NCBI RefSeq assembly: GCF_006345805.1
Contig: NW_021833125.1
Span: forward strand, 1-29,287
Source of the DNA: Octopus sinensis
Lineage: Eukaryota
DNA: 29,287 nt
Direction: 5' to 3'
The notes beneath the pieces are model-generated. The model saw nothing but the letters and a program-made list of their open reading frames with translations, had not been told where the DNA came from and searched no databases. Made by a program: the position numbers and the translations under genes. How positions within the stretch are numbered: the stretch's first letter is position 1; every line of letters begins with the position of its first letter. Of this stretch, positions 246 through 29,287 are shown piece by piece.

Positions 246-923
246 ATGAATATATAAAGAAGGTAAAAAATTAAAAGACAAACTTGAGAACGCAAACAGG
301 AACCGAAAGAAAAACATTAAAATTTACTCGAAAAACATTTGAGAAATGCTATTAAAATTTAATAATATTTTTCAGTCGAAATTAAAATAAATTGCTAAAT
401 AAATTAGCGCCAAGCAATATCAAGATTGAGATCAGAGTAAAGAAATATGTAGAGAAATTAAATTCCTTATATTCAAAAAAATATACATATATGATTTTAT
501 TTTTCAGTTTGTTTATTATTATTATAATTTTTTTTTTTGGTCTCTTGTATTCGTTAAGTATATGAATTTATTCATTTCTAAAAAGCAAAAGGAGGAAGAA
601 AGAAGAGAAAAAAACCCCAGAAGATTTCATGATTCTGACATTGTCATGCAGGCAAAGTAATCAGATAGGACAAATGTAAATTGAATCGGTGTTTTTGTCA
701 GGAGCCCTATCGTTCCATCTTTTGTATTTAAATTAATTCTTTTCATAAGAACGACACAACTAAATGTTTTCCCTTTCTTCCGTCTGTCTGCGAGGAATCT
801 ATTGTTGTGGCACCAGCTGCTTGTTGTTCATCGTGTAGTTGATGTTATAACTATTATTCTTGTTATGTTTGCTGCTGTTGTTAATAGGGTCGTTGTAATT
901 GTTATGGTATTTTTTGTGGTAAA

Positions 924-1969
924 GGCGGCGAGCTGGCAGAAACGTTAGCACACCGGGCGAAATGCTTAGCATTATTTCGTCTGCCGCAACGTTCTGAGTT
1001 CAAATTCCGCCGAGGTCGACTTTGCCTTTAATAGCCCCTTGTGGGCAATAAAGAAATAGGTATTTCGTCTGCCGTTACGTTCTGAGTTCAAATTCTGCCG
1101 AGGTCGACTTTGCCTTTCATCCTTTCGGGGGTCGACTAAATAAGTACCAGTTACGCACTCGGGTCGATATAATCGACTTAATCTGTTTGTATGTCCTCTC
1201 TGTGTTTAGCCCCTTGTGGGTAGTAAAGAAATAGGTATTTCGTCTGCCGCTACGTTCTGAGTTCAAATTCCGCCGTGGTCGACTTTGCCTTTCGTCCTTT
1301 CGGGGTCGATTAAATAAGTACCAGTTACCCACTGGGGTCGATATAATCGACTTAATCCGTTTGTATGTTCTTGTTTGTCCTCTCTGTGTTTAGCCCCTCG
1401 TGGGTAGTAAAGAAATAGGTATTTCGTCTGCCGCTACGTTCTGAGTTCAAATTCCGCCGAGGTTGACTTTGCCTTTCATCCTTTTGGGGTCGATTAAATA
1501 AGTACCATTAACGCACTGGGGTCGATATAATCGACTTAATCCGTTTGTATATCATTGTTTGTCCTCTCTGTGTTTAGCCCCTTGTGGGTAGTAAAGAAAT
1601 AGGTATTTCGTCTGCCGCTACGTTCTGAGTTCAAATTCCGCCGAGGTTGACTTTGCCTTTCATCCTTTTGGGGTCGATTAAATAAGTACCATTAACGCAC
1701 TGGGGTCGATATAATCGACTTAATCCGTTTGTATATCATTGTTTGTCCTCTCTGTGTTTAGCCCCTTGTGGGTAGTAAAGAAATAGGTATTTCGTCTGCC
1801 GCTACGTTCTGAGTTCAAATTCCGCCGAGGTCGACTTTGCCTGTCATCCGTTCGGGGTCGATTAAATAAGTACCAGTTACGCACTGGCGCCTATATAATC
1901 GACTTAATCCGTTTGTCTGTCCTTGTTTGTCCTCTCTGTGTTTAGCCCCTTGTGGGTAGTAAAGAAATA
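924..1969 (+). mobile_element. SINE-B concatemer array 1: one tRNA-like head, an internally deleted first unit, then five 175-184 bp units
   Basis: Head ggcggcgagctggcagaaacgttagc (A-box-like) at 924. Units start with ggtatttcg at 1059, 1234, 1418, 1602, 1786; each has B-box-like gagttcaaattcc and ends agccccttgtgggtagtaaagaaata. TSD-like flanks ttttttgtggtaaa (910-923) and ttttttgtgggaaa (~1973-1986). Confidence 0.92.
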
Positions 1970-2039
1970 GCTTTTTTTGTGGGAAAATCGGTGTTATGCA
2001 TGTTGTGTTTGTAGTTATTGTTGTTATTAATTTTGTTGT

Positions 2040-2254: not shown

Positions 2255-2684
2255 GCGTGAGTGTGTGGTAAGAAGTTTGCTTCCCAGCAACATGGTTCCA
2301 GGTTCAGTCTAACTGCGTGGCACCTTGCGTGTGTACTTTTTACTAGAGCACCGGACCAAGCAATGCTTTGCGAGTGAATTTCGTAAAAGGAACCTGCGTG
2401 GAAGCCTGTAGTATGTATGTATATATATACACATATACATATATATGTGTGTGTGTATGTGTGTGTGCATGTGTACGGTGTGTTTGTGTCTGTTTTTTCA
2501 CCAGCGCTTGACGACCGGTGTTGCTTTGTTAACGTCCCTTTAACTTAGGGGTTTAGCAAATGAGACCGATAGAATAAAATAGCAGACACAAACACCGGGC
2601 TGGGTTTGTTCGACAAACACTCCTTCAAGGCCGTGCCCCAGCAGAGCCGCTGTCCAATGACTGAAACAAGTCAACGAAGAAAAG
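2255..2684 (+). mobile_element. SINE-A (tRNA-derived, internal microsatellite), diverged full-length copy
   Basis: gtggtaagaagtttgcttccc..ggttcagtc head, (TA)/(TG) middle, gagaccgatagaataa..caatgactgaaacaag tail; same layout as 8536-9041. Confidence 0.8.
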
Positions 2685-2867: not shown

Positions 2868-3078
2868 TATTTCTTTACTACCCACAAGGGGCTAAACACA
2901 GAGGGGACAAGCAAGGACAGACTAACGGATTACGTCGACCCCAGTGCGTAACTGGTACTTAATTTATCGACCCCGAAAAGATGAAAGGCAAAGTCGACCT
3001 CGGCGGAATTTGAACTCCGAACGTAACGGCTGACGAAATACAGCTACGCATTTCATCGAGCGTGCTAATGTTTCTACT
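2868..3078 (-). mobile_element. SINE-B monomer
   Basis: Reverse complement of an array unit plus part of the head (tatttctttactacccacaaggggctaaacac ... cgtgctaatgtttct). Confidence 0.88.
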
Positions 3079-6675: not shown

Positions 6676-7087
6676 GGAGGCGCAATGGCCCAGTGGTTAG
6701 GGCAGCGGACTCGCGGTCGGAGGATCGCGGTTTCGATTCCCAGACCGGGCGTTGTGTGTGTTTATTGAGCGAAAACACCTAAAGCTCCACAAGGTTCCGG
6801 CAGGGGGTGGTGGCGACCCTTGTTGTACTCTTACGCTCCAACTTTCTCTCATTCTTTCTTCCTGTTTCTTGTCCCCGACTTCCTACACAACCGCTGAGCC
6901 TGGATGTGCATTCATCTATCCATCGATGCTCTCGGTGTCGGGGGTTGACCTGCTTTCTCTTCTGCGGCTCTTACGGACAGCAAAGGACCACGTTTCGGAC
7001 TCTTCCACTACAGACAATCCTGAGGCGCGATCTTGCGAGCTCTGGGACGAAGACCGCTTCACTCAACAAACAAACAAACAAACAAAC
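6676..7087 (+). mobile_element. SINE-C with tail type 1: tRNA-derived head, body, distinct tail ending in (CAAA)n
   Basis: ggaggcgcaatggcccagtggttagggcagcggactcgcgg..ggtttcgattccc (A/B-box-like). Head and body nearly identical to 26423 until ttcctgtttct. Confidence 0.85.
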
Positions 7088-8011: not shown

Positions 8012-8234
8012 TTTCTCTTTTACTCTCTTTTACTTGTTTCAGTCATTTGACTGCTGCCATGCTGGAGCACCGCCTTTAATCGAGCAACTTGACCCCGGGA
8101 CTTATTCTTTTGTAAGCCCAGTACTTATTCTATCGGTCTCTTTTGCCGAACCGCTAAGTAACGGGAACATAAACACACCAGCATCGGTTGTCAAGCAATG
8201 CTAGGGGGACAACACAGACACACAAGCACACACA

Positions 8235-8285
<51 letters not shown>

Positions 8286-8484
8286 ATTACATATATATAT
8301 ATATACATATATACATATATACGACGGGCTTCTTTCAGTTTCCGTCTACCAAATCCACTCACAAGGCTTTGGTTGGCCTGAGGCTATAGTAGAAGACACT
8401 TGCCCAAGATGCCACGCATTGGGTCTGAACCCGGAACTATATGGTTCGTAAGCAAGCTACTTACCACACAGCCACTCCTGCGCC
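8012..8484 (-). mobile_element. SINE-A full-length with internal (TA)n
   Basis: On - strand: ggcgcaggagtggctgtgtggtaagtagcttgc head, gaagcccgtcg(TA)n middle, cagcatggcagcagtcaaatgactgaaacaagtaaaag tail. Confidence 0.9.
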
Positions 8485-10877: not shown

Positions 10878-11042
10878 GGGACTGAACTGCGTATTTAGAA
10901 GCGTCAACAACTATTAGATACGGTTGTTAAGTAATTGATATATGGGAGACGAGACACAAAAGCAGAAATGACAAATACCGATGGAATAACTCAATATTTG
11001 TTTTGGAGCCAAATATACTTTTTATATTAGGAGTTAACTGAA

Positions 11043-11230
11043 GGCGGCGAGCAGGCGGAACCATTAGCTCCCCTGGCAAAATGCTTAACGGCTTGTGGTC
11101 CGCGTTGACGTTCTGAGTTCATATTACACTGGAGTCGACTTCGCCTTTCATCATCTCGAGGGTCGATAAAATAAGTACCATTTGGACATACAGAGTCAAT
11201 ATAGTCCTTCTCTTTTAGTGCCTTATAGTT
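11043..11230 (+). mobile_element. SINE-B-like, old diverged monomer
   Basis: ggcggcgagcaggcggaacc..acgttctgagttca..gtcgacttcgcctttcatc..gggtcgataaaataagtacc. Confidence 0.75.
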
Positions 11231-11802: not shown

Positions 11803-12100
11803 GTCAGTGGATCAGCACTAAGACAAGTGGAGGAATTTAAGTCTCTTGGGGACAAATTCGCGAGTGATTGGAGGCAGGAGGCTGAAGGATGAATTGGGTG
11901 TCAGAGTTGCAAGTCATACTCCAGTTCCAACATTCGATTCTTAGAAGAGATGTTGGATAAAAAAAATAAACCAAACTAGCTATCTTCAGTTCGGTTTTCG
12001 TGCCATTCTTCGCCTATTGGCATGAATGCTGGGCAATGGCTAAAACAGTATGATCGCGAATAGAAACGGCCGGAATGAGGTTTCTCTGAAGGGTGTCTAG
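11803..12100 (+). pseudogene. RTE-clade LINE ORF fragment (end of RT domain), part 1
   Basis: Hand translation gives GSALRQVEEFKSLG..KLAIFSSVFVPFFAYWHECWAMAKTV*SRIETAGMRFL*RVS, matching the RTE/Expander-type pattern QVEEFKYLG..KLSIYRSIYVPTLTYGHELW..SRIQAAEMSFLRRV; contains stops and frameshifts. Confidence 0.8.
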
Positions 12101-12378
12101 CACTACGTCAGTTATGACGATGAGTGTTCCAGTTGATTTGATCAATGGAACAGCCTGCTCGTGAAATTAACGTCCAAGTGGCTGAGTACTCCACAAACAA
12201 GTGTAACCTTAATGTAGTTCGCGAGGAGATTCAGCGTAACACACAATGTGACAAGGTTGGCCCTTTGAAAAACAGGTACAACTCATTTTTGCCAACTGGG
12301 TGGACTGGAACAACGTGAAATAAAGTGTCTTGCTCAAGGACACGATGAATACCCAAACTGCTAATCCATGCACCTTCA
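12100..12378 (-). mobile_element. SINE-E (CORE-like SINE), copy with internally deleted head
   Basis: - strand gtgtccttgagcaagacactttatttcacgttgttccagtccacccagttggcaaaaatgag resembles the MIR/CORE domain; tail shared with 26620-26801. Confidence 0.75.
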
Positions 12379-13579: not shown

Positions 13580-14481
13580 TCTAGGAGTAGCCAAGAACGA
13601 AATAGTTGGATAATATCCATGGCTTCAGTTGGCATACTTAGGAAACCAGCCAGAAAGTGTAATGATGGTGGTTGCTTCTGATAGGATCCTTGGTCGCTTC
13701 TGATAGGGACCTATGGTAGAGGTGCTTGAGGACTGCATTCCCAAGGCCAGTAGACGAACAAGAGCTGACGAAGAACATATTGGCTGGATAATATCCATTG
13801 ACTCAGTTGGTCAAACTTGTGAATCCAACCAGAAAGTGTAATGACCCAGCTTCTGGTAGAATCCCATGAAGGAAGTGCCTGAGGGCCGCATCCTCTTGAT
13901 TAGCAGAAGACCTGAGGTTGATCAAGTACAAGATGGCTGGATAACAACCATAGACTCGGTTGGTAACACTTGGGGTTTCAGTCCACCATTGATTTAGTTC
14001 CACGCATACGGAATGTATGTGTGTATGCCTGTCTGTATTTGTCATTGAGTGTAAGGATATATGTATATGTGTGTATGCGTGTATGTGCGTAAATCTGCAT
14101 GAGTTTATGCATGACCATGCGAGCATATGTTTCAGGAATGAGTACGAACAATAAAAACACATGATAGACTGATCAAACGAAAGAAAAAAAAAAACTAAGC
14201 CTTCATCAGCTGTCTCGCTAAGGCTTCTGGCAGTTTCGAGGCCAGTAGACGAGCAAGGGCTGACGAAGAACATATTGGCTGGTTAATATCCATTGACTCA
14301 GTTGGTCAAACTTGTGAATCCAACCAGAAAGTGTAATGACCACAGCTTCTGGTAGAATCCCATGAAGGAAGTTGCTTGAGGGCCGCATCCTCATGATTAG
14401 CAGAAGACCTGAGGTTGATCAAGAACGAGATGGTTGGACAATAACCATAGACTAAGGTGGTAACACTTGGGGTTTCAGCCG
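13580..14481 (+). repeat. Amplified RTE C-terminal module; includes ~237 bp direct repeats 13745-13981 and 14240-14481
   Basis: Anchor gg(a/t)(t/c)aa(t/c)a(t/a)ccat at 13608, 13786, 13939, 14281, 14436, homologous to the parent copy at 13261. Confidence 0.75.
13981..14244. repeat. Module M, copy 2
   Basis: Matches 10561-10877 but with a shorter TG tract. Confidence 0.9.
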
Positions 14482-14851: not shown

Positions 14852-14956
14852 TTCGTAGCTCACACAGCCACTGTGTAGTATTGCAATTATAACAAGACAT
14901 AAGCATGCCCGTTGCTAAGGGGGTGTACTGGACGGCACCGCTCCCTCAGTATTCAA

Positions 14957-15898
14957 GACGGCGAGCTGGCAGAATCGTTAGCACGTTGGGCGAAATGCTT
15001 AGCGGTATTTCGGCTGCCGTTACGTTGTGAGTTCAAATTCCGCCGTGGTCGACTTTGCCTTTCATCCTTTCGGGGTTGATAAATTAAGTACCAGTTATGC
15101 ACTGGGGTCGATGTAATTGACTTAATACCTATGTCTGTCCCCTCTATGTTTAGCCCCTTGTGGGTAATAAAGAAATAGGTATTTCTTCTGCCGTTATGTT
15201 CTGAGTTCAAATTCCGCCGAGGTCGACTTTGCCTTTCATCATTTCGGGGTCGATAAATTAAGTACCAGTTACGCACTGGGGTCGATGTAATCGACTTAAT
15301 ACCTATGTCTGTCCTTGTTTGTCCCCTCTGTGTTTAGCTCCTTGTGGGTAATAAATAAATAGGTATTTCGGCTGCCGTTACGTTGTGAGTTCAAATTCCG
15401 CCGTGTTCGACTTTGCCTTTCATCCTTTCGGGGTCGATAAATTAAGTACCAGTTACGCACTGGGGTCGATGTAATCGACTTAATACCTATGTCTGTCCCC
15501 TCTATGTTTAGCCCCTTGTGGGTAATAAAGAATAGGTATTTCTTCTGCCGTTATGTTCTGAGTTCAAATTCCGCCGAGGTCGACTTTGCCTTTCATCATT
15601 TCGGGGTCGATAATTAAGTACCAGTTACGCACTGGGGTCGATGTAATCGACTTAATACCTATGTCTGTCCTTGTTTGTCCCCTCTGTGTTTAGCTCCTTG
15701 TGGGTAATAAATAAATAGGTATTTCGGCTGCCGTTACGTTGTGAGTTCAAATTCCGCCGTGTTCGACTTTGCCTTTCATCCTTTCGGGGTCGATAAATTA
15801 AGTACCAGTTACGCACTGGGGTCGATGTAATCGACTTAATACCTATGTCTGTCCTTGTTTGTCTCCTCTGTGTTTAGCCCCTTGTGGGTAATAAAATA
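14957..15898 (+). mobile_element. SINE-B concatemer array 2: head plus five units in A-B-A-B-A order
   Basis: Units start at 15004, 15178, 15362, 15535, 15718; exact 9-bp TSD agtattcaa at 14948-14956 and 15899-15907. Confidence 0.93.
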
Positions 15899-16299
15899 AG
15901 TATTCAATGGTGCAGCCTCAGATTTACAGTGATACACTTATTTCGAAACTCCAATTTAGTATTAGTGTCCATATTCGGAAGCACCCCCAATGCATCGGTC
16001 TGGCAACGGGCCTGCAGAAGTGTACCGACTTTATTTCTCCATCTAGCATTATCGCCGCATCTGTATTTCTCCTTGCTCTCTATATTGCTCTCTGCATACG
16101 TATCCAACAACATACAAATAACATGTATGCACACGTATACATATAGATATGTGTGTGCGCACATGTGTGTGAGTGAGTGTGTGCGCGTGTATTGTGTGTG
16201 TGTTTGTGTGTGTGTCTGTGTGTGTGTGCATACGTGCGTGTGTGAGGCTGTATTACTTAAGGGTAAGATTATGGGTGTGAAAATACAGTACATTTACGC

Positions 16300-17639: not shown

Positions 17640-17640
17640 T
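16960..17640. repeat. (TA)n/(TG)n/(TATG)n tracts followed by a (GATA)n array (~17460-17640)
   Basis: Low complexity. Confidence 0.9.
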
Positions 17641-17744
17641 TATGTGTGGTTGTTGAAGGCAAAACTAGAAGAGAGAAGGTCAGGGGAAAAGGGAGACGAT
17701 ATAGAGAAAAAAAAATGATAAGTGGTGATGAAAGGAAAAACGGA

Positions 17745-18105
17745 ACTAGAAGATCGAAAACAGATTTGAAAAATGCAAAACATGAACACACGGAAAAAGA
17801 ACGGACGAAGAAAATGTGTAAGAGAGGAAAGAAAATGAAACAAAGAAAGATTGAATTTAGGAGAAAGAATTTTTAAGAGGAAAACTACAGAAAGCATACG
17901 ATTCTAAAATCAGTGGAGAGGAATGAATGTCACTCAAGCACGCAACAAACTCTTAAAAAACAAAATGGATGAAAAGTGTTCCAAAAATATGTAGGAGTAG
18001 GAAGGAATGGAAAAAAGTTTTTTATATTAAGAAAGAAACGAAGGACTCTTTGAGAAGGTAATGGAATGGTAAAACCATATCAAGGAACGAGGAAAACTTC
18101 TGGTT
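17745..18105. repeat. Three-copy block, copy 1 (core 17884-18105)
   Basis: aaaatcagtggagaggaatga..tcaaggaacgaggaaaacttctggtt shared with 20328-20548 and 23938-24160. Confidence 0.9.
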
Positions 18106-18159
18106 GTCACTGTTATATATACGTGTATTTTAATGCGTGTATATATGTATTTATGTGTG

Positions 18160-18280
<121 letters not shown>

Positions 18281-18348
18281 GTCTGCCTGTATGAATATAT
18301 GTATCTCTTTACCTATCTATCCCTTACTCAATATCTATGTATGTAAAA

Positions 18349-18745
18349 GGCGGCGAACTGGCAGAAACGTTAGCACGCCGGGCGAAATGCGGAGGCGTAT
18401 TTTGTCTGCCGTTACGTTCTGAGTTCAAATTCCGCCGAGATCGATTTTGCCTTTCATCCTTTCGGGGTCGATACTTTAAGTACCAGTTACGCACTGAGGT
18501 CGACGTAATCGACTTAATCCGTTTTCTCTCCTTGTTTGTCCCCTCTGTGTTTAGCCCCTTGTAGGTAGTAAAGAAATAGGTATTTCGTCTGCCGCTACGT
18601 TCTGAGTTCAAATTCCGACGAAGTCGACTTTGCCTTTCATCCTTTCGGTGTCGATAAATTAAGTGCCAGTTGCGTACTGGGGTCAATCTAATGGACTGGC
18701 CCCCTCTCCAAAAATTTCGGGCCTTGTGCTTAGAGTAGAAAGGAA
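18349..18745 (+). mobile_element. SINE-B chimeric dimer: head, unit with the LINE-like tail, then second unit with a different tail
   Basis: Junction aagaaata|ggtatttc at 18578/18579. Second unit ends gactggcccctctccaaaaatttcgggccttgtgcttagagtagaaagg. TSD-like atatctatgtatg at 18331-18343 and 18745-18757. Confidence 0.88.
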
Positions 18746-20061: not shown

Positions 20062-20184
20062 AGGGAGAGAGAGAGAGAATAAGAAGAAAGCAAGAAGCCT
20101 TATAAACAAGGAAGAGGAAATAGCTACAGAAAGTGAAAAATGAGATAATCGACAAAAATGAAGAGAAACCGACAGCCATAGCTC

Positions 20185-20548
20185 GTAGAAAAAGAGCTAA
20201 AGCAGATTTGAGAATTGCAGAAAATTTGAACAAAAAATAAGGGAAGAGGTGCAGAAAATATATGATAGAAAAGAATACTAATACATAAAAGAAGAAACCA
20301 GACGAAGGAGATAGAAATCAAAAGAAGACTACAGAAGGCAGACGACTGTAAAATCAGTGGAGAGGAATGAATGTCACTCGAGCACACAGTAGATGCTTGG
20401 AAAACAAAATGGATGAAATGTGTTACAAAAATATGTGGGGATACGAAGGAATGGGAAAATGTTTTTATATTATGAGAGAAAGGAAGGAATCTTTGAAAAG
20501 GTAATGGAATGGTAAAACCACATCAAGGAACGAGGAAAACTTCTGGTT
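20185..20548. repeat. Three-copy block, copy 2 (core 20328-20548)
   Basis: Homologous to copy 1; followed by (TATC)n at ~20575-20735. Confidence 0.9.
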
Positions 20549-22139: not shown

Positions 22140-22476
<337 letters not shown>

Positions 22477-23521
22477 TGTTTCTTTATTAGCCACACAGGG
22501 CTGCACACAGATAGAACAAATTACAAGGTAGAGCTTTTCTTTTGAAGGTTAAAAAAAAAAAAAGGAAGGAGGAGTTTCGATCAAAAGGGATCGTAAAAGG
22601 AGAGAAAGAGGACAAAAAAAGGGGGGTTTAAAAAAAAGGGGGAGAGGAAAAAAAAATGATCAATAGGGATCGTTATCACAGAAATGTCAATATGAAGTGT
22701 AAAGGGGAGGACAGGTGAGGTTTACCCGTGGAAAGAAAAGCCTACGGAAAAGACCACGGTAACCTCGGTCAATGGAGTCACATGTTATATTTCTTTTTTT
22801 TTTTTTTTTGCAAATAAGCAACTCTCTGTTTTCAATTTCTGGGTTCATAGGATCATGCTCAAGGTGGCTTCGTCATTCATACGTGCCATTCTTGCTACAT
22901 TCACCCATCTTTTTTTAAAACATTCGCTAGACAAAACTTGCCTCTCTACTCTCACTTTCCTTTTCAAGTGGTACTTGAAGAAGTTGATGAGAGATTGACC
23001 AGAGAGGAAAGTGTTCGTCTCCAATCCTTTCAGACGCGTCCACCAGATACATTCTTTCGCCATAGCCACAAGGATGATGAAAATAGCTCTTCCTTCCCGT
23101 TTGAAGGAGGGAGGCGTGACAATATTGACGATAGACTCAGCTGATAAACCGACTCGTCCCACACGTGACAGCAGTTGTTCGACACAAGCCCACAGGTCGG
23201 AAATTGTTGGACACTGCACGAGTGCGTGCAGAACGGTTTCGTCGCTCTGACCGCATCTCGGGCAGGTCGGCCCCGTGTTTCTCGAGCCGTGTCTGTAGAG
23301 CTTGTCCCGAACGGGTAGCGCTTCTCGGTAGCACTGCCAGGCCAGGGATCTCTGGAAGTTGTCCATGGGCCCTGGCCCGAAAGTCGTCCTGAACAGGCGG
23401 GTCAGGTACTCCTCGTCGACGTCCAGGTTCGCCCCGAGCTCGTCGTAGTACCTTCCCTCCACTAAACCCCTATAGAATGCTTTGGTTGTGTTGAAGTCAC
23501 TCAAGGTCGACCCAGGACGGC
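22477..23521 (-). mobile_element. 5'-truncated L1/Tx1-type non-LTR retrotransposon (ORF2 C-terminus plus ~370 bp 3'UTR)
   Basis: Coding remnant followed by a pyrimidine-rich UTR ending ctaataaagaaaca|(TATC)n; GATA arrays on both sides. Confidence 0.88.
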
Positions 23522-23522
23522 T
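22845..23522 (-). pseudogene. ORF2 C-terminal fragment with zf-RVT zinc finger (225 codons, open)
   Basis: AWQCYREALPVRDKLYRHG..CPRCGQSDETVLHALVQC..LW (CX2C..H..C finger typical of L1/Tx1 ORF2). The upstream 'YLSI' part of the 303-aa ORF is translated microsatellite. Confidence 0.88.
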
Positions 23523-23593
23523 AGATAGATAGATAGAGATAGATAGATAAATAGATAAATAGATAATAGATAGATAGATAGATAGATAGATAG

Positions 23594-23666
<73 letters not shown>
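23522..23666. repeat. (GATA)n array at the LINE 5' junction
   Basis: Same strand and same GAGA interruptions as 22140-22476. Confidence 0.97.
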
Positions 23667-23668
<2 letters not shown>

Positions 23669-23804
23669 GGATGCGTGGATGGATTTGATAGAGAGACAGA
23701 GGAAGAATAAGAAAGCAGGAAGAAGACAAAAAACAAAGGAAATAGGAAGTACACATATAGACATATTTCTGAGATAGCAGACGACGTTAAAGCAAAAAAC
23801 AGCC

Positions 23805-24160
23805 GTGACTGGAAGATCGAAAGCAGATTTCAGAAAAAAGTAGAATATCTAAATAAAAAATGAAGTGGAAGAGGTCTAGAAAAATGAATGATAGAAAAAA
23901 ATTGAAGAAGTAAAGAATGATAAGTATCAAAAGGGTGACTACAGACGGCAGACGACTGTAAAATCAGTGGAGAGGAATGATTGTCACTCAAGCACACACG
24001 GTAGATGCTTGGAAAACAAAATGGATGAAAAGTGTTCCAAAAATATGTAGGAGTAGGAAGGAATGGAAAAAAGTTTTTATACTCAGAGAGAAATGAAGGA
24101 ATCTTTGAAAAGATAATGGTATGGTAAAACCACATCAAGGAACGAGGAAAACTTCTGGTT
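23805..24160. repeat. Three-copy block, copy 3 (core 23938-24160)
   Basis: Homologous to copy 1. Confidence 0.9.
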
Positions 24161-24614
24161 GTGCGTTCGATACTGTTATATACATATCTGAAAGTAGTAA
24201 CATATCCGATAAGATTGGTGTAAGATTTGGTAAATGTGAGTCGACGGAATGCGTAAAGACGAAGGTTTTGAGGGGAAGGAAAGGATAATGAGCCGGGGGC
24301 GGTGTTGGTTGGGGTAGTGGTGGTGGAGAAGATTTTGAGGTGAAGGAGGTGAGGTGTTTGGTGGAAGGGTGAGAGTGGGAGGAGAAAGAGGAGTAGGGGT
24401 GCCGTATATGGATATATACAAATGTATGTGTGTGTATATACGAATGTATAAATGTATATATATGTGTGTGGGTATATATAAATGTATATGTATGTGTGTG
24501 CATACAAAGATATATATACATAAATACCAATAGATATAAACATATACATATTCAGACGTTCATGTATAATTAAGTACATTCATATATATATCTATTCTTC
24601 TATCCTTCTATCTA

Positions 24615-26374: not shown

Positions 26375-27150
26375 TCTTTTCATCTTTTACTTGTTTGAGT
26401 TAGAGGACTTAGGCCATACTGTGGAGGCGCAATGGCCCAGTGGTTAGGGCAGCGGACTCGCGGTCATAGGATCGCGGTTTCGATTCCCAAACCGGGCGTT
26501 GTGAGTGTTTATTGAGCGAAAACACCTAAAAGCTCCACGAGGCTCCGGCAGGGAATGGTGGTGATCCCTGCTGTACTCTTTCACCACAACTTTCTCTCAC
26601 TCTTACTTCCTGTTTCTGTTGTACCTGTATTTCAAAGGGCCGGCCTTGTCACTCTCTGTGTCACGCTGAATATCCCCGAGAACTACGTTAAGGGTACACG
26701 TGTCTGTGGAGTGCTCAGCCACTTACACGTTAATTTCACGAGCAGGCTGTTCCGTTGATTCGGATCAACCGGAACTCTCATCGTCGTAACCGACGGAGTG
26801 CTTCCATCCATTAGCCCATATTGGAGCACCGCCTTGAAGTGTTTTGCCATAAAAAATGGCTGGTACTTATCCTATCAGTATATTTTTCCGAGCTGGTAAG
26901 TGATGCAGACACAAATAAACCAGTACCGGCTGTCAAGCGGTGAAGAGAAACATAGGTACAAACACACACACACGTATGCGCACGCACACACATACACACA
27001 CGCATATACATACATACATACAAATATATATGTATAAGCAACTTGCTTCCATGTAATTTTTGCCTAGCAAGGGCTGCGGTCGGTCCGTGGCTATACTAAA
27101 AGATACTTGTCCAAGGTACCGAGCAGTAGAACTGAACCCGAAACTATATC
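26375..27150 (-). mobile_element. Old SINE-A split by the SINE-C insertion
   Basis: ttttacttgtttgag..ggccatactg before and gagcaccgccttgaag..ggctgtcaagcgg after the insertion; head remnant at ~27040-27150. Confidence 0.6.
26423..26810 (+). mobile_element. SINE-C with tail type 2 (C head/body plus the tail used by SINE-E)
   Basis: tRNA-like head as at 6676; tail ..gctgttccgttgattcggatcaaccggaactctcatcgtcgtaaccgacggagtgc; TSD ttaggccatactg (26409-26421) / ttagcccatattg (26811-26823), 11/13 match. Confidence 0.88.
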
Positions 27151-27484: not shown

Positions 27485-27665
27485 AAGTCGTAGAATCGTT
27501 GGCAGGCCGGACAGAGTGCTTAGCAGTATTTCGTCTGTTTTTACGTTCTGTGTTCGAATTCCGCTGATATCAACTGTGTCTTTAATCCTTTCAGTGTCAA
27601 TAAAGTATGTGCCAGTTGGGCACTGGGGTTAGTGCAAGCGTCTTCCCCTTCCCCTCAAAATTGTT
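27485..27665 (+). mobile_element. SINE-B-like, old monomer with the alternative tail
   Basis: gtagaatcgttggcaggccggac..cttagcagtatttcgtctg..acgttctgtgttcgaattcc..cccttcccctcaaaatt. Confidence 0.65.
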
Positions 27666-28480: not shown

Positions 28481-28833
28481 AGGGTATATAGAGCATTTTC
28501 CCCGCTAACCCATTTCATCTGGGCGCTTCAGTATAATAATCAGTAATATTGTTTAAAGATTTCTCGTTGGCTGATAGTTAGGAAATTCTAATTAAATTAA
28601 CAATAACTGATCATGGGTGGTTAGAACGCCTATGTATGTATTGCTGGTCTTCGTTAGTTTCAGGGAATGGGTAACGTAATCCTGTGACAAGTGATAATGT
28701 TACGTTCAGTAAAATTAGTTCTCTTCGTATTGCTATGAAAATTCAACCACACACATACATATATACATAGATACATGCATACTGACAAATAGACAGACAG
28801 GCAGACAGATAATCATATATATATATATATATA

Positions 28834-28937
28834 TGTTTCTTTATTAGCCACACAGGCAGGACAAATTACAAGGTAAAGCTTTTCTTTTGGAGATAAAAAG
28901 GGGGGTTGGTTTTCGATCAAAAGGGATCGTAAAAGGA
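28834..28937 (-). mobile_element. 3'-terminal fragment of the same L1/Tx1 family as 22477-23521
   Basis: tgtttctttattagccacacagg..acaaattacaaggta.agcttttctttt..ttcgatcaaaagggatcgtaaaagga matches 22477-22600 with deletions; flanked by (TA)n and degenerate GATA/GACA tracts. Confidence 0.85.
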
Positions 28938-29287
28938 AAGAAAGAAGAAAGCAAAAGCAAAAAAAAAGACAGATAGATTAGTAGACGGGTCGATAGACAG
29001 ACGGGTGGATAGATAGACAAACAGATAGAGAGAGTGGGAGAGAGAGAGAGAGAGAGAGAACGAGAGATGGATAGACAGGCAGTCAGACAGACAGATAGAC
29101 AGAAAGATAGCTAGATAGATAGATAGACAGACAAAAAAACACACACACACATAGATACACGGACAGACAGACAGGCAGACAGATATTCCAGATGAGACGC
29201 CCACACGGAAGACGTAAGTGACCCAGTTAGGTAGCTAAGTGGGGAAAACACGAAATATGCCCGAGGGCCCAAAACCTTTATAAAATT

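What the first reader, a model, noticed from the sequence alone, without database searches (positions are those of the whole stretch)
22477..22528. SINE-B shares its 3' tail with the L1/Tx1-type LINE: candidate LINE-SINE partner pair
LINE end (- strand): ccttgtaatttgttctatctgtgtgcagccctgtgtggctaataaagaaaca. SINE-B end: ccttgtttgtcccctctgtgtttagccccttgtgggtaataaagaaata. By hand, about 40 of 49 aligned nt match with one 3-nt gap, and both sequences end at the same point. Established: SINEs borrow LINE 3' tails to recruit LINE reverse transcriptase, best known for L2, CR1 and RTE partners. Inference: SINE-B is mobilised by this L1/Tx1 family. I do not know whether this pair has been described.
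Basis: partly seen in the sequence, partly recalled or inferred. Interest (0 to 1): 0.8.

Follow-up and report, generated by a model that had tools for sequence, protein, structure and literature searches.

The report
Octopus SINE borrows LINE tail
A short mobile element that is abundant in octopus DNA ends in the same ~45-base, hairpin-forming tail as an L1/Tx1-type LINE, which most likely lets it use that LINE's copying enzyme; this kind of parasitism is well known, but it has rarely been reported for L1-group LINEs.

Summary
The minus-strand sequence at 22477-22528 is the 3' end of a 5'-truncated LINE (ORF2 C-terminus with zf-RVT, then a 368-nt 3'UTR). Its last ~50 nt align with the 3' end of the tRNA-Arg-derived "SINE-B" at 40/50 identity, z about 10 against shuffles. 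The window comes from an octopod.

The same tail ends divergent copies of this LINE family in Octopus sinensis, Argonauta hians and an unnamed Logan sample. The rest of their 3'UTRs cannot be aligned. The O. sinensis LINE tail matches SINE-B better (38/42) than the window's own copy does. In Argonauta, at least two SINE families with different heads carry the tail.

The tail can fold into an ~11-bp stem-loop with a CUUGU loop. One stem pair is G-C in LINEs, C-G in SINE-B and A-U in two other copies.

The LINE has APE, RT and zf-RVT domains, and human L1 ORF2p is its closest solved structure. Published mollusc surveys call this group Tx1 or L1-Tx1. I could not run an RT phylogeny.

Best reading: a stringent-type LINE-SINE partner pair. 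It is a new member of a known kind, and mobilisation itself is untested. I found no paper describing it.

The parts
22477..22528 (-). LINE 3' tail, the finding itself. It contains the stem-loop (AGCC CUGUGU GGCU flanked by UCU.GUG / AAU.AGA) and the terminal AAUAAAGAAACA.
   Evidence: Covariance-model match at 22476-22526, 50 bits, E 1e-9. Fold.
22529..22844 (-). Remainder of the LINE 3'UTR. It is T/C-rich and low-complexity on the element strand, and it is not conserved between genera.
   Evidence: Only the last ~33 nt hit the Argonauta loci. UTR remainder 0.51 against 0.49 for shuffled sequences.
22845..23519 (-). 5'-truncated LINE ORF2 C-terminus: 224 codons plus stop, with the CCHC motif CPRCGQSDETVLHALVQC.
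   Evidence: Pfam zf-RVT E 2e-8. Homologues in O. bimaculoides, O. sinensis and Argonauta hians.
22140..22476 (.). (TAGA)n microsatellite, which reads (TATC)n on the element strand, directly after the LINE 3' end. A second (TAGA)n at 23522-23666 abuts the 5' truncation point.
28833..28957 (-). Second, shorter LINE 3' fragment with the same terminus. It has a 12-nt deletion in the 5' half of the stem-loop, is followed by (TA)n, and lies within (GACA/GATA)n.
   Evidence: Covariance-model match at 23 bits, E 0.003.
921..1970 (+). SINE-B array 1. It consists of the tRNA-like head (921-972), one internally deleted unit, then five 175-185-nt units, each ending in the shared tail. Tails lie at 1184-1234, 1368-1418, 1552-1602, 1736-1786 and 1920-1970. 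A 14-nt TSD flanks the whole array.
14955..15895 (+). SINE-B array 2: head plus five units, alternating between 174-nt and 184-nt variants. Tails lie at 15128-15178, 15312-15362, 15486-15531, 15668-15718 and 15852-15902. It is flanked by a 9-11-nt TSD. The head folds as tRNA-Arg (TCG).
18346..18733 (+). Composite element. It has a head plus one SINE-B unit (tail at 18529-18579), followed by a second unit (18579-18733) with a different but related tail, ...GGGC CUUGU GCUU AGAGUAGAAAGG. One 15-nt TSD flanks the whole element.
2868..3075 (-). Single SINE-B copy (head plus one 175-nt unit). The tail is at 2867-2917 and the 5' end abuts a (CA)n repeat.

Best explanation
The window is octopod DNA. 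The sequence at 22477-22528 is the conserved 3' terminal module of an L1-group LINE, called L1-Tx1 or Tx1 in mollusc TE surveys. The LINE has APE, RT and a C-terminal CCHC zinc knuckle.

SINE-B is a Pol III, tRNA-Arg-derived SINE that carries a copy of that module at its own 3' end.

Inferred mechanism: the LINE's ORF2 protein recognises the ~31-nt stem-loop (three short helices and a CUUGU loop) together with the A-rich terminus ...UAAUAAAGAAAU(A). It starts target-primed reverse transcription exactly at that terminus. SINE-B RNA presents the same module, so the enzyme copies it in trans.

Shown here: the homology and its colinearity to the terminus, the conservation of the tail across LINE subfamilies and two octopod families, the presence of the tail on several unrelated SINE heads, the TSDs around SINE-B, and the pairing pattern of the stem.

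Inferred, not shown: RNA recognition by ORF2p and actual trans-mobilisation.
For: (1) Homology. The window LINE tail matches SINE-B at 40/50 (z 8.5-10.5). The O. sinensis LINE tail matches at 38/42 (z 14.8) and the Argonauta LINE tail gives z 14.2.

(2) The tail is the most conserved nucleotide segment of the LINE. Across four copies that are 45-80% identical in protein, the last 45 nt score 0.76, against 0.54 for shuffled sequences. The rest of the 3'UTR scores 0.51 against 0.49, and the last 600 nt of the ORF score 0.68 against 0.60. BLAST of the window's 372-nt UTR against the Argonauta loci finds only its last 33 nt, at 88-91% identity.

(3) LINE identity. A near-complete relative in Argonauta (L002) has an ORF1 with a CCHC knuckle, then Exo_endo_phos, RVT_1 and zf-RVT domains. 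The best PDB matches are human L1 ORF2p, at E 5e-22 for the RT part and 8e-13 for the stretch from APE through the linker. A tree-based survey of molluscs, which includes O. sinensis, names Tx1 and no L1 among the clades quoted in the passages I read. Cephalopod annotations list L1-Tx1.

(4) Several SINE families with different heads carry the same tail. These are Octopus SINE-B, an Argonauta family with the same core but a different head, and a short tRNA SINE at L002 1060-1356. I counted about 25 tail-bearing copies in 25 kb of Argonauta DNA. This fits one LINE donor serving many SINEs.

(5) Structure. The same three-helix stem-loop is the minimum-energy fold of five tails folded independently. 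On 40 model matches, 86.7% of cells pair, against 43-50% when the 3' partners are slid by 1-3 columns. One pair is G-C (19 copies), C-G (10) or A-U (2). A hairpin with a CUUGU loop and a stem of 3 bp or more recurs near the 3' end of LINEs or SINEs in 6 sequences with different stem letters. Only 6% of CTTGT occurrences in shuffled sequences have such a stem.

(6) SINE-B is a retroposon. It has a tRNA-Arg-like head and TSDs of 14, 11 and 15 nt.

(7) AAUAAA is conserved in a Pol III SINE, which has no use for a poly(A) signal. This argues that the terminal A-rich block serves the reverse transcriptase.
Against: There is no experiment, so mobilisation is inferred from homology alone.

Only 7-8 LINE 3' ends could be read, and no genome-wide library was available. 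A second LINE clade with the same tail cannot be excluded.

The window's own LINE copies are the poorer matches. One has a CUGUGU loop and a 3-nt indel. The other lacks 12 nt of the stem.

The stem-loop is thermodynamically weak. RNAalifold gives -0.28 kcal/mol for the inner helix. Single-sequence folds have z-scores from -0.02 to -3.6.

Clear double-sided covariation rests mainly on one base pair. The C-G state is one event inherited by all SINE-B copies.

The structure was derived from these same sequences, which inflates the slide control.

Many Tx1-clade LINEs are target-specific. The window's LINE fragments sit in (TAGA)n/(GACA)n, but the SINE-B insertion sites share no such target. Placement in Tx1 was not tested by phylogeny.
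Confidence: 0.8

Rival explanations
1. The match is a chance resemblance between two A/T-rich, low-complexity ends.
For: The last 11 nt (TAATAAAGAAA) are A-rich. A 17-nt version of the motif occurs by chance in many unrelated metagenome contigs.
Against: The full 50-nt alignment scores z 8.5-14.8 against shuffles. The same 45-nt tail recurs at LINE termini in two other species and in one unnamed sample.
Confidence: 0.01
2. The tail in the LINE is secondary. Either a 5'-truncated SINE-B inserted at the end of the LINE UTR, or the LINE captured a SINE tail, so the direction is SINE to LINE and says nothing about the enzyme's specificity.
For: The direction of transfer cannot be read from a pairwise match. 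In Octopus, SINE-B copies greatly outnumber LINE copies.
Against: The tail sits exactly at the terminus of divergent LINE subfamilies (45-80% protein identity) in Octopodidae and Argonautidae. It carries LINE-specific stem letters (GCC/GGC) that are absent from all Octopus SINE-B copies. No SINE body lies upstream of it. Several unrelated SINE heads share it. Even if a SINE had been the donor, long-term retention at the LINE terminus would still imply that the LINE enzyme uses it.
Confidence: 0.05
3. The tail is shared, but SINE-B is or was copied by a different LINE. This could be another clade that carries the same or a closer tail, or an extinct subfamily. The L1/Tx1 family seen here would then be a bystander.
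For: Octopus genomes hold large RTE, Dong-R4 and CR1 populations, and an RTE element is the one reported as transcribed in the brain. None of their 3' ends could be examined here. The window's LINE copy matches SINE-B less well than an O. sinensis subfamily does.
Against: The best available match (38/42 to the terminus, with the same stem-loop) is within this LINE family. The pairing of this family with this tail holds in both Argonauta and Octopus.
Confidence: 0.1
4. The shared block is kept for another reason, such as a poly(A) signal, transcript stability or 3' processing, and not for recognition by reverse transcriptase.
For: The block contains a canonical AATAAA. The predicted fold is weak.
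Against: A Pol III SINE does not need AAUAAA. Elements end precisely 6-8 nt after it with no poly(A). The stem covaries. In tested LINE-SINE pairs such tails are the RT recognition site (eel UnaL2/UnaSINE1, cited).
Confidence: 0.04

Closest known systems
Stringent-type LINE-SINE pairs with a common 3' tail (for example eel UnaL2/UnaSINE1 of the L2 clade; Ohshima & Okada's 'common tail' pairs, described in PMC3747384 and PMC4824008)
   Same: A tRNA-derived SINE has a last ~50 nt homologous to the LINE's 3' end. The tail forms a stem-loop with a conserved loop and a variable stem. The elements end precisely, without a poly(A) tail.
   Different: The LINE here belongs to the L1 group, not to L2, CR1 or RTE. 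No 3' terminal short repeat is consistently present. Recognition has not been tested.
L1-clade stringent pairs: maize LINE1-1_ZM with ZmSINE2/ZmSINE3, and Chlamydomonas L1-1_CR with SINEX-3_CR (Ohshima 2012, PMC3472496)
   Same: An L1-clade LINE has a ~45-50-nt 3' end that is far more conserved than the rest of the element. It forms a hairpin with compensatory changes and is shared with SINEs.
   Different: Those pairs are from plants and algae and end in poly(A). This one is from an animal (cephalopod), lies on the Tx1 side of the L1 group, and has no poly(A). [quoted passage not shown]
Tx1-Mar LINEs and SINEU in crocodilians (Kojima 2015, PMC4494074)
   Same: A Tx1-clade LINE is proposed as the mobiliser of a SINE family.
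   Different: That partnership was inferred from a shared insertion target (a Mariner transposon) and shared 5' snRNA heads, and SINEU ends in poly(A). Here the link is a specific shared 3' tail, and no shared target is seen.
Human L1 with Alu (relaxed type)
   Same: An L1-group ORF2p (APE plus RT; closest solved structure) serves a Pol III SINE in trans.
   Different: L1 and Alu share only a poly(A) tail. Here a specific structured tail is shared and there is no poly(A).
Tandem SINE multimers in bivalves, TSD-(SINE)n-TSD in Scapharca broughtonii (PMC11481361)
   Same: A first unit has a complete tRNA head, followed by head-less repeats, and the whole array is flanked by one TSD (one search compared).
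   Different: Here every unit keeps the complete LINE-derived tail and begins at the same point inside the anticodon stem. Units of two variants are mixed within one array.

Membership tests
LINE-SINE partner pair with a common 3' tail (stringent type) | The SINE has an RNA polymerase III head derived from a small RNA | tested here: met
   ARAGORN folds 14978-15053 as tRNA-Arg (TCG). An A-box-like TGGCAGAA and a B box GAGTTCAAATTCC are visible.
LINE-SINE partner pair with a common 3' tail (stringent type) | The SINE 3' end is homologous to the LINE 3' end, colinear up to the terminus | tested here: met
   40/50 with the window LINE and 38/42 with the O. sinensis LINE, z 8.5-14.8. Similarity is confined to the last ~50 nt. 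The termini coincide within 1-3 nt.
LINE-SINE partner pair with a common 3' tail (stringent type) | The tail is conserved among LINE copies and subfamilies, more than the rest of the 3'UTR | tested here: met
   Tail 0.76, UTR remainder 0.51 (equal to shuffled), ORF 0.68. The tail is present in 7-8 LINE 3' ends from three or more sources. The sample is small.
LINE-SINE partner pair with a common 3' tail (stringent type) | The tail forms a conserved stem-loop supported by compensatory changes | tested here: inconclusive
   86.7-95% of cells pair, against 50% or less when slid. One pair occurs as G-C, C-G or A-U. The same fold is predicted for 5 sequences. However, the folding energy is weak, z-scores are mostly non-significant, and the structure was derived from the same data.
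LINE-SINE partner pair with a common 3' tail (stringent type) | SINE copies are flanked by target-site duplications | tested here: met
   TSDs of 14, 11 and 15 nt, each with one mismatch.
LINE-SINE partner pair with a common 3' tail (stringent type) | The LINE mobilises the SINE in trans and this depends on the tail | not testable with these tools
   This needs a retrotransposition assay.
L1 group / Tx1 clade of non-LTR retrotransposons | ORF2 has an N-terminal APE endonuclease, an RT domain and a C-terminal CCHC motif | tested here: met
   The Argonauta relative L002 has Exo_endo_phos (E 5e-11), RVT_1 (E 2e-18) and zf-RVT (E 6e-8). The window fragment retains only zf-RVT. Human L1 ORF2p is the best PDB match.
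L1 group / Tx1 clade of non-LTR retrotransposons | The RT domain groups with Tx1 references in a phylogeny (for example RTclass1) | not testable with these tools
   No named Tx1 or L1 clade references were obtainable, and database hits carry no clade names. Indirect support: a tree-based mollusc survey names Tx1 and no L1 among the clades quoted in the passages read. However, one homology-based O. vulgaris annotation lists both L1-Tx1 (56 Mb) and L1 (11 Mb).
L1 group / Tx1 clade of non-LTR retrotransposons | ORF1 is of the zinc-knuckle type and not the mammalian L1 type (Transposase_22) | tested here: met
   The 640-aa ORF1 in L002 contains CHRCGLPGHIRSGC and has no Pfam Transposase_22 hit. 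An RRM was not tested.
L1 group / Tx1 clade of non-LTR retrotransposons | Insertion preference for a specific repeat (true of many Tx1 members, not all) | tested here: inconclusive
   Both window fragments lie inside (TAGA)n/(GACA)n. The O. sinensis and Argonauta copies and the SINE-B insertions do not.
DeuSINE superfamily (RepeatMasker tRNA-Deu) | A central Deu domain follows the tRNA head | not tested
   No Deu reference sequence was available. From memory, the core ...CATCCTTTCGGGGTCGATAAATTAAGTACCAG... resembles it. tRNA-Deu is reported as a main octopus SINE type. The same core is present in the Argonauta SINEs.

The most novel reading that the evidence does not exclude
An animal L1-group (Tx1) LINE uses stringent recognition of its 3' end through a hairpin. 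It has kept the same ~45-nt recognition module since before Argonautidae and Octopodidae split. It is the enzyme source for much of the octopod-specific SINE expansion, which makes up about 12% of the O. vulgaris genome. The RTE element now studied in the octopus brain would then not be the driver. The tandem SINE multimers would be by-products of this enzyme switching from the tRNA-like head of one SINE RNA to the recognition tail of another.
Probability: 0.35. Interest if true: 0.65.

Novelty: new member of a known kind. Interest (0 to 1): 0.5.

Why it matters
SINEs are the largest transposon class in Octopus genomes, and their expansion is regarded as octopus-specific. The latest O. vulgaris annotation still leaves most SINEs unclassified and assigns its tRNA-Deu families no LINE partner. 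Naming the LINE whose enzyme copies them would turn a descriptive observation into a testable one.

For transposon biology, L1-group LINEs are the textbook 'relaxed' enzymes that need only poly(A). [quoted passage not shown] An animal Tx1-side example with a conserved hairpin would support the view that specific 3' end recognition is ancestral in the L1 group. It would also give a compact RNA element (~31 nt) for studying how an L1-like ORF2p picks its template.

Tried and rejected
(1) I scanned JGI metagenome contigs for the 17-nt tail core TTGTGGNTAATAAAGAAA. All 120 loci returned were chance matches in unrelated DNA, with no upstream similarity.

(2) Protein-guided scans of genome contigs and viral contigs with the LINE C-terminal alignment found no relatives.

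(3) I tried to classify the LINE from source-given names among 291 homologues. The hits are almost all unnamed ENA or JGI proteins, so L1 and Tx1 could not be separated.

(4) A full-text search for SINE-B sequence strings in papers gave 0 hits. Searches for an octopus Tx1-SINE partnership found TE surveys but no description of the pair.

(5) An Rfam scan of the window found only sub-threshold microsatellite matches to miRNA models.

(6) A Pfam scan of ten other window ORFs of at least 100 aa found nothing. The window therefore holds no RT domain for this LINE.

(7) Logan contigs for P0007 and P0009 were decayed LINE copies without readable 3' ends.

(8) I rejected target specificity for (TAGA)n as an explanation of the flanking microsatellites. 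It is not seen at other LINE copies or at SINE-B sites.

(9) I rejected the idea that the SINE-B arrays are simple post-insertion duplications of one monomer. Short and long unit variants are only 88% alike and are as close to units of the other array as to their own neighbours.

Full report
**What is in the window.** The window has 39% G+C and is dense with microsatellites.

On the minus strand, 22845-23519 encodes 224 residues ending in a stop codon, with a CCHC motif (CPRCGQSDETVLHALVQC). Pfam calls this zf-RVT, E 2e-8. Its homologues come from Octopus bimaculoides (97% over a short stretch), O. sinensis and Argonauta hians, so the window is octopod DNA.

The reading frame starts abruptly next to a (TAGA)n block at 23522-23666. 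This is therefore a 5'-truncated LINE, and no RT domain remains in the window.

A 368-nt 3'UTR follows the stop codon. It ends at 22477 with ...GGCTAATAAAGAAACA, followed by about 340 nt of (TATC)n on the element strand.

A second, shorter fragment of the same LINE 3' region lies at 28833-28957. It ends at the same nucleotides, and unrelated sequence follows. That fixes the LINE terminus.

**SINE-B.** ARAGORN folds 14978-15053 as tRNA-Arg with anticodon TCG. A conserved core follows, and the element ends ...CCCCTTGTGGGTAATAAAGAAATA.

It occurs at four places:
- 921-1970
- 14955-15895
- 18346-18733
- 2868-3075 (minus strand)

Three of these are flanked by target-site duplications of 14, 11 and 15 nt.

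**Checking the observation.** The SINE-B string is a consensus. No copy matches it exactly, and seven match within 2-3 mismatches.

A local alignment of the LINE tail with a SINE-B tail gives 40 matches in 50 columns with one 3-nt gap. The score is 27 against 9.1 +/- 1.7 in 2000 shuffles. The similarity is limited to the last ~50 nt and runs to the terminus in both elements.

**Is the tail a property of the LINE?** I fetched DNA around homologous proteins.

- In O. sinensis (L001; 45% protein identity to the window copy) the LINE ends 232 nt after its stop codon with ...TGTCCCCCTCTATGTTTGGGCCCTTGTGGCTAATAAAGAAAT.
- In Argonauta hians (L002), a near-complete element ends 222 nt after the stop with ...GTCCCCTCTATGTTTTTGCCCTTGTGGCTAATAAAAGAAATA.
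- L005 contains two more LINE 3' ends with the tail.
- A Logan contig (L136) ends ...GTTTAACCCTTGTGGTTTGAATAAA at the contig edge.

The O. sinensis tail matches SINE-B at 38/42 (z 14.8). That is better than the window's own LINE copy.

Across four copies, the last 45 nt score 0.76 (shuffled 0.54). The rest of the UTR scores 0.51 (shuffled 0.49), and the last 600 nt of the ORF score 0.68 (shuffled 0.60). BLAST of the window's 372-nt UTR against the Argonauta loci finds only its last 33 nt.

The tail is therefore the best-conserved nucleotide segment of this LINE across two octopod families, Octopodidae and Argonautidae.

It is not an inserted SINE fragment, for three reasons:
- No SINE body precedes it.
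- It always sits at the terminus.
- LINE tails carry GCC...GGC in the stem where every Octopus SINE-B carries CCC...GGG.

**More SINEs with the same tail.** Two Argonauta loci (25 kb in total) hold about 25 tail-bearing short elements. One family has the same core as SINE-B but a different head. Another is a short tRNA-derived element without that core (L002 1060-1356). All end ...GGCCCTTGTGGCTAATAGAGAAATCTAT. One tail on several heads is what a LINE donor predicts.

**Structure.** Five tails were folded on their own: SINE-B, two Octopus LINEs, the L136 LINE and an Argonauta SINE. All five gave the same minimum-energy shape. It has three short helices (UCU/AGA, UGUU/AAUA, GCCC/GGGU or GGCC/GGCU) closed by a CUUGU loop, and it spans about 31 nt, ending about 4 nt before the terminus.

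On 15 hand-chosen tails, 91-95% of cells pair, against at most 52% when the partners are slid. On 40 covariance-model matches the figures are 86.7% against at most 49.5%.

One pair is G-C in LINEs and Argonauta SINEs, C-G in all Octopus SINE-B copies and A-U in two other copies. Neighbouring pairs change G-U to A-U or G-C.

A CUUGU-loop hairpin with at least 3 bp and differing stem letters also appears near the 3' end of a cuttlefish LINE (L007) and in the second tail type at 18690-18733. Only 6% of CTTGT sites in shuffled sequences have such a stem.

Several points weigh against the structure:
- RNAalifold gives only -0.28 kcal/mol for the inner helix.
- Single-sequence z-scores are mostly not significant.
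- The C-G state is one inherited event.
- The structure was derived from these same sequences.

I rate the stem-loop as likely but not shown.

**What kind of LINE.** The Argonauta element has a 640-aa ORF1 with one CCHC knuckle and no Transposase_22 match. Its ORF2 has Exo_endo_phos, RVT_1 and zf-RVT.

Human L1 ORF2p is the best solved-structure match for both halves. R2 proteins come far behind.

Database names did not help with the clade. In the passages I read, a published tree-based classification of mollusc LINEs that includes O. sinensis names Tx1 and no L1. Cephalopod annotations list L1-Tx1. One homology-based O. vulgaris table lists both L1-Tx1 and a smaller L1 class.

'L1/Tx1-type' is therefore supported at the group level. 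Tx1 proper is probable but untested.

**Mechanism.** By analogy with tested stringent pairs (cited), the LINE's ORF2p would bind the stem-loop and begin reverse transcription at the A-rich terminus. SINE-B RNA offers the same module. AAUAAA is retained in a Pol III element, and both elements end precisely with no poly(A). Both facts fit a role in priming rather than in polyadenylation. This step is inference.

**Comparison with what is known.** Tail sharing is the classic Ohshima-Okada principle. In the L1 group it is rare. [quoted passage not shown]

Tx1-Mar has been proposed to mobilise crocodilian SINEU, but that rests on shared targets, and SINEU has poly(A) tails.

None of the octopus TE papers I could read pairs a SINE with a LINE. 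The 2026 O. vulgaris annotation leaves its tRNA-Deu families and most other SINEs without a partner. I could not consult Repbase or Dfam, where the resemblance may already be noted.

**Verdict.** It is a new member of a known kind and of moderate interest. It would gain interest if this LINE proves to be the main driver of the octopod SINE expansion.

Noticed in passing
window 921-1970 and 14955-15895: SINE-B forms head-to-tail multimers: one tRNA-like head followed by five units of 174-185 nt. Each unit starts at GGTATTTCG in the anticodon stem (about tRNA position 28) and ends at the SINE terminus. Each whole array has one TSD. Short and long unit variants are only 88% alike and are mixed within arrays. 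Some neighbouring units are 97-100% identical. This suggests mixed-origin multimers followed by later local duplication. One speculative idea is that the enzyme stalls next to G26 of the tRNA-like fold and switches to the tail of a second SINE RNA. Similar TSD-(SINE)n-TSD arrays are described in a bivalve.
   Followed up: partly
window 18579-18733: A second unit is joined to a SINE-B unit within one TSD. It carries a different tail...TTTCGGGCCTTGTGCTTAGAGTAGAAAGG. This tail keeps a 4-bp stem and the same CUUGU loop. It matches 24/26 nt of the 3'UTR of a LINE that is 43% identical (to the Argonauta query) in locus L008, from an ENA assembly of unknown organism (z 8). It may represent a second LINE-SINE tail pair within the same LINE group.
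   Followed up: partly
window 22140-22476, 23522-23666, 28760-28832, 28958-29183: Both LINE fragments are embedded in (TAGA)n/(GACA)n-type microsatellites. Some Tx1-clade LINEs are known to target microsatellites. LINE copies in the other loci and the SINE-B insertions are not in such repeats, so this may be coincidence in a microsatellite-rich region.
   Followed up: partly
window 17640-18107, about 20080-20548, 23667-24162: A ~500-nt repeat is present in three copies at 73-75% identity, read on the minus strand. Each copy is followed by a long (TCTA)n block. It is probably the 3' part of another retroelement with a microsatellite tail. It has no coding signal and no similarity to the shared tail.
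   Followed up: no
window 11041-11215 and 27492-27660: Two more SINE copies share the tRNA-like head and core with SINE-B at 75-77% identity, but their 3' ends differ and match none of the LINE 3'UTRs examined convincingly. The SINE core is thus combined with several different tails.
   Followed up: partly
L002 1060-1356 (Argonauta hians): A short (~150 nt) tRNA-derived SINE without the SINE-B core sits as two tandem copies. Each copy ends in the LINE tail.
   Followed up: no
protein P0015: An octopod LINE ORF2 fragment (60% identical to the Argonauta element) is deposited in NCBI as a 'zinc-binding domain-containing protein' of a Herbaspirillum MAG. This is most likely host DNA binned into a bacterial genome.
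   Followed up: no
window 2262-2677 / 8026-8470, 6676-6869 / 26423-26617, 12099-12282 / 26618-26802, 13744-13981 / 14239-14478: Several further interspersed or locally duplicated repeat families are present at 67-94% identity, some in inverted orientation. I did not characterise them.
   Followed up: no
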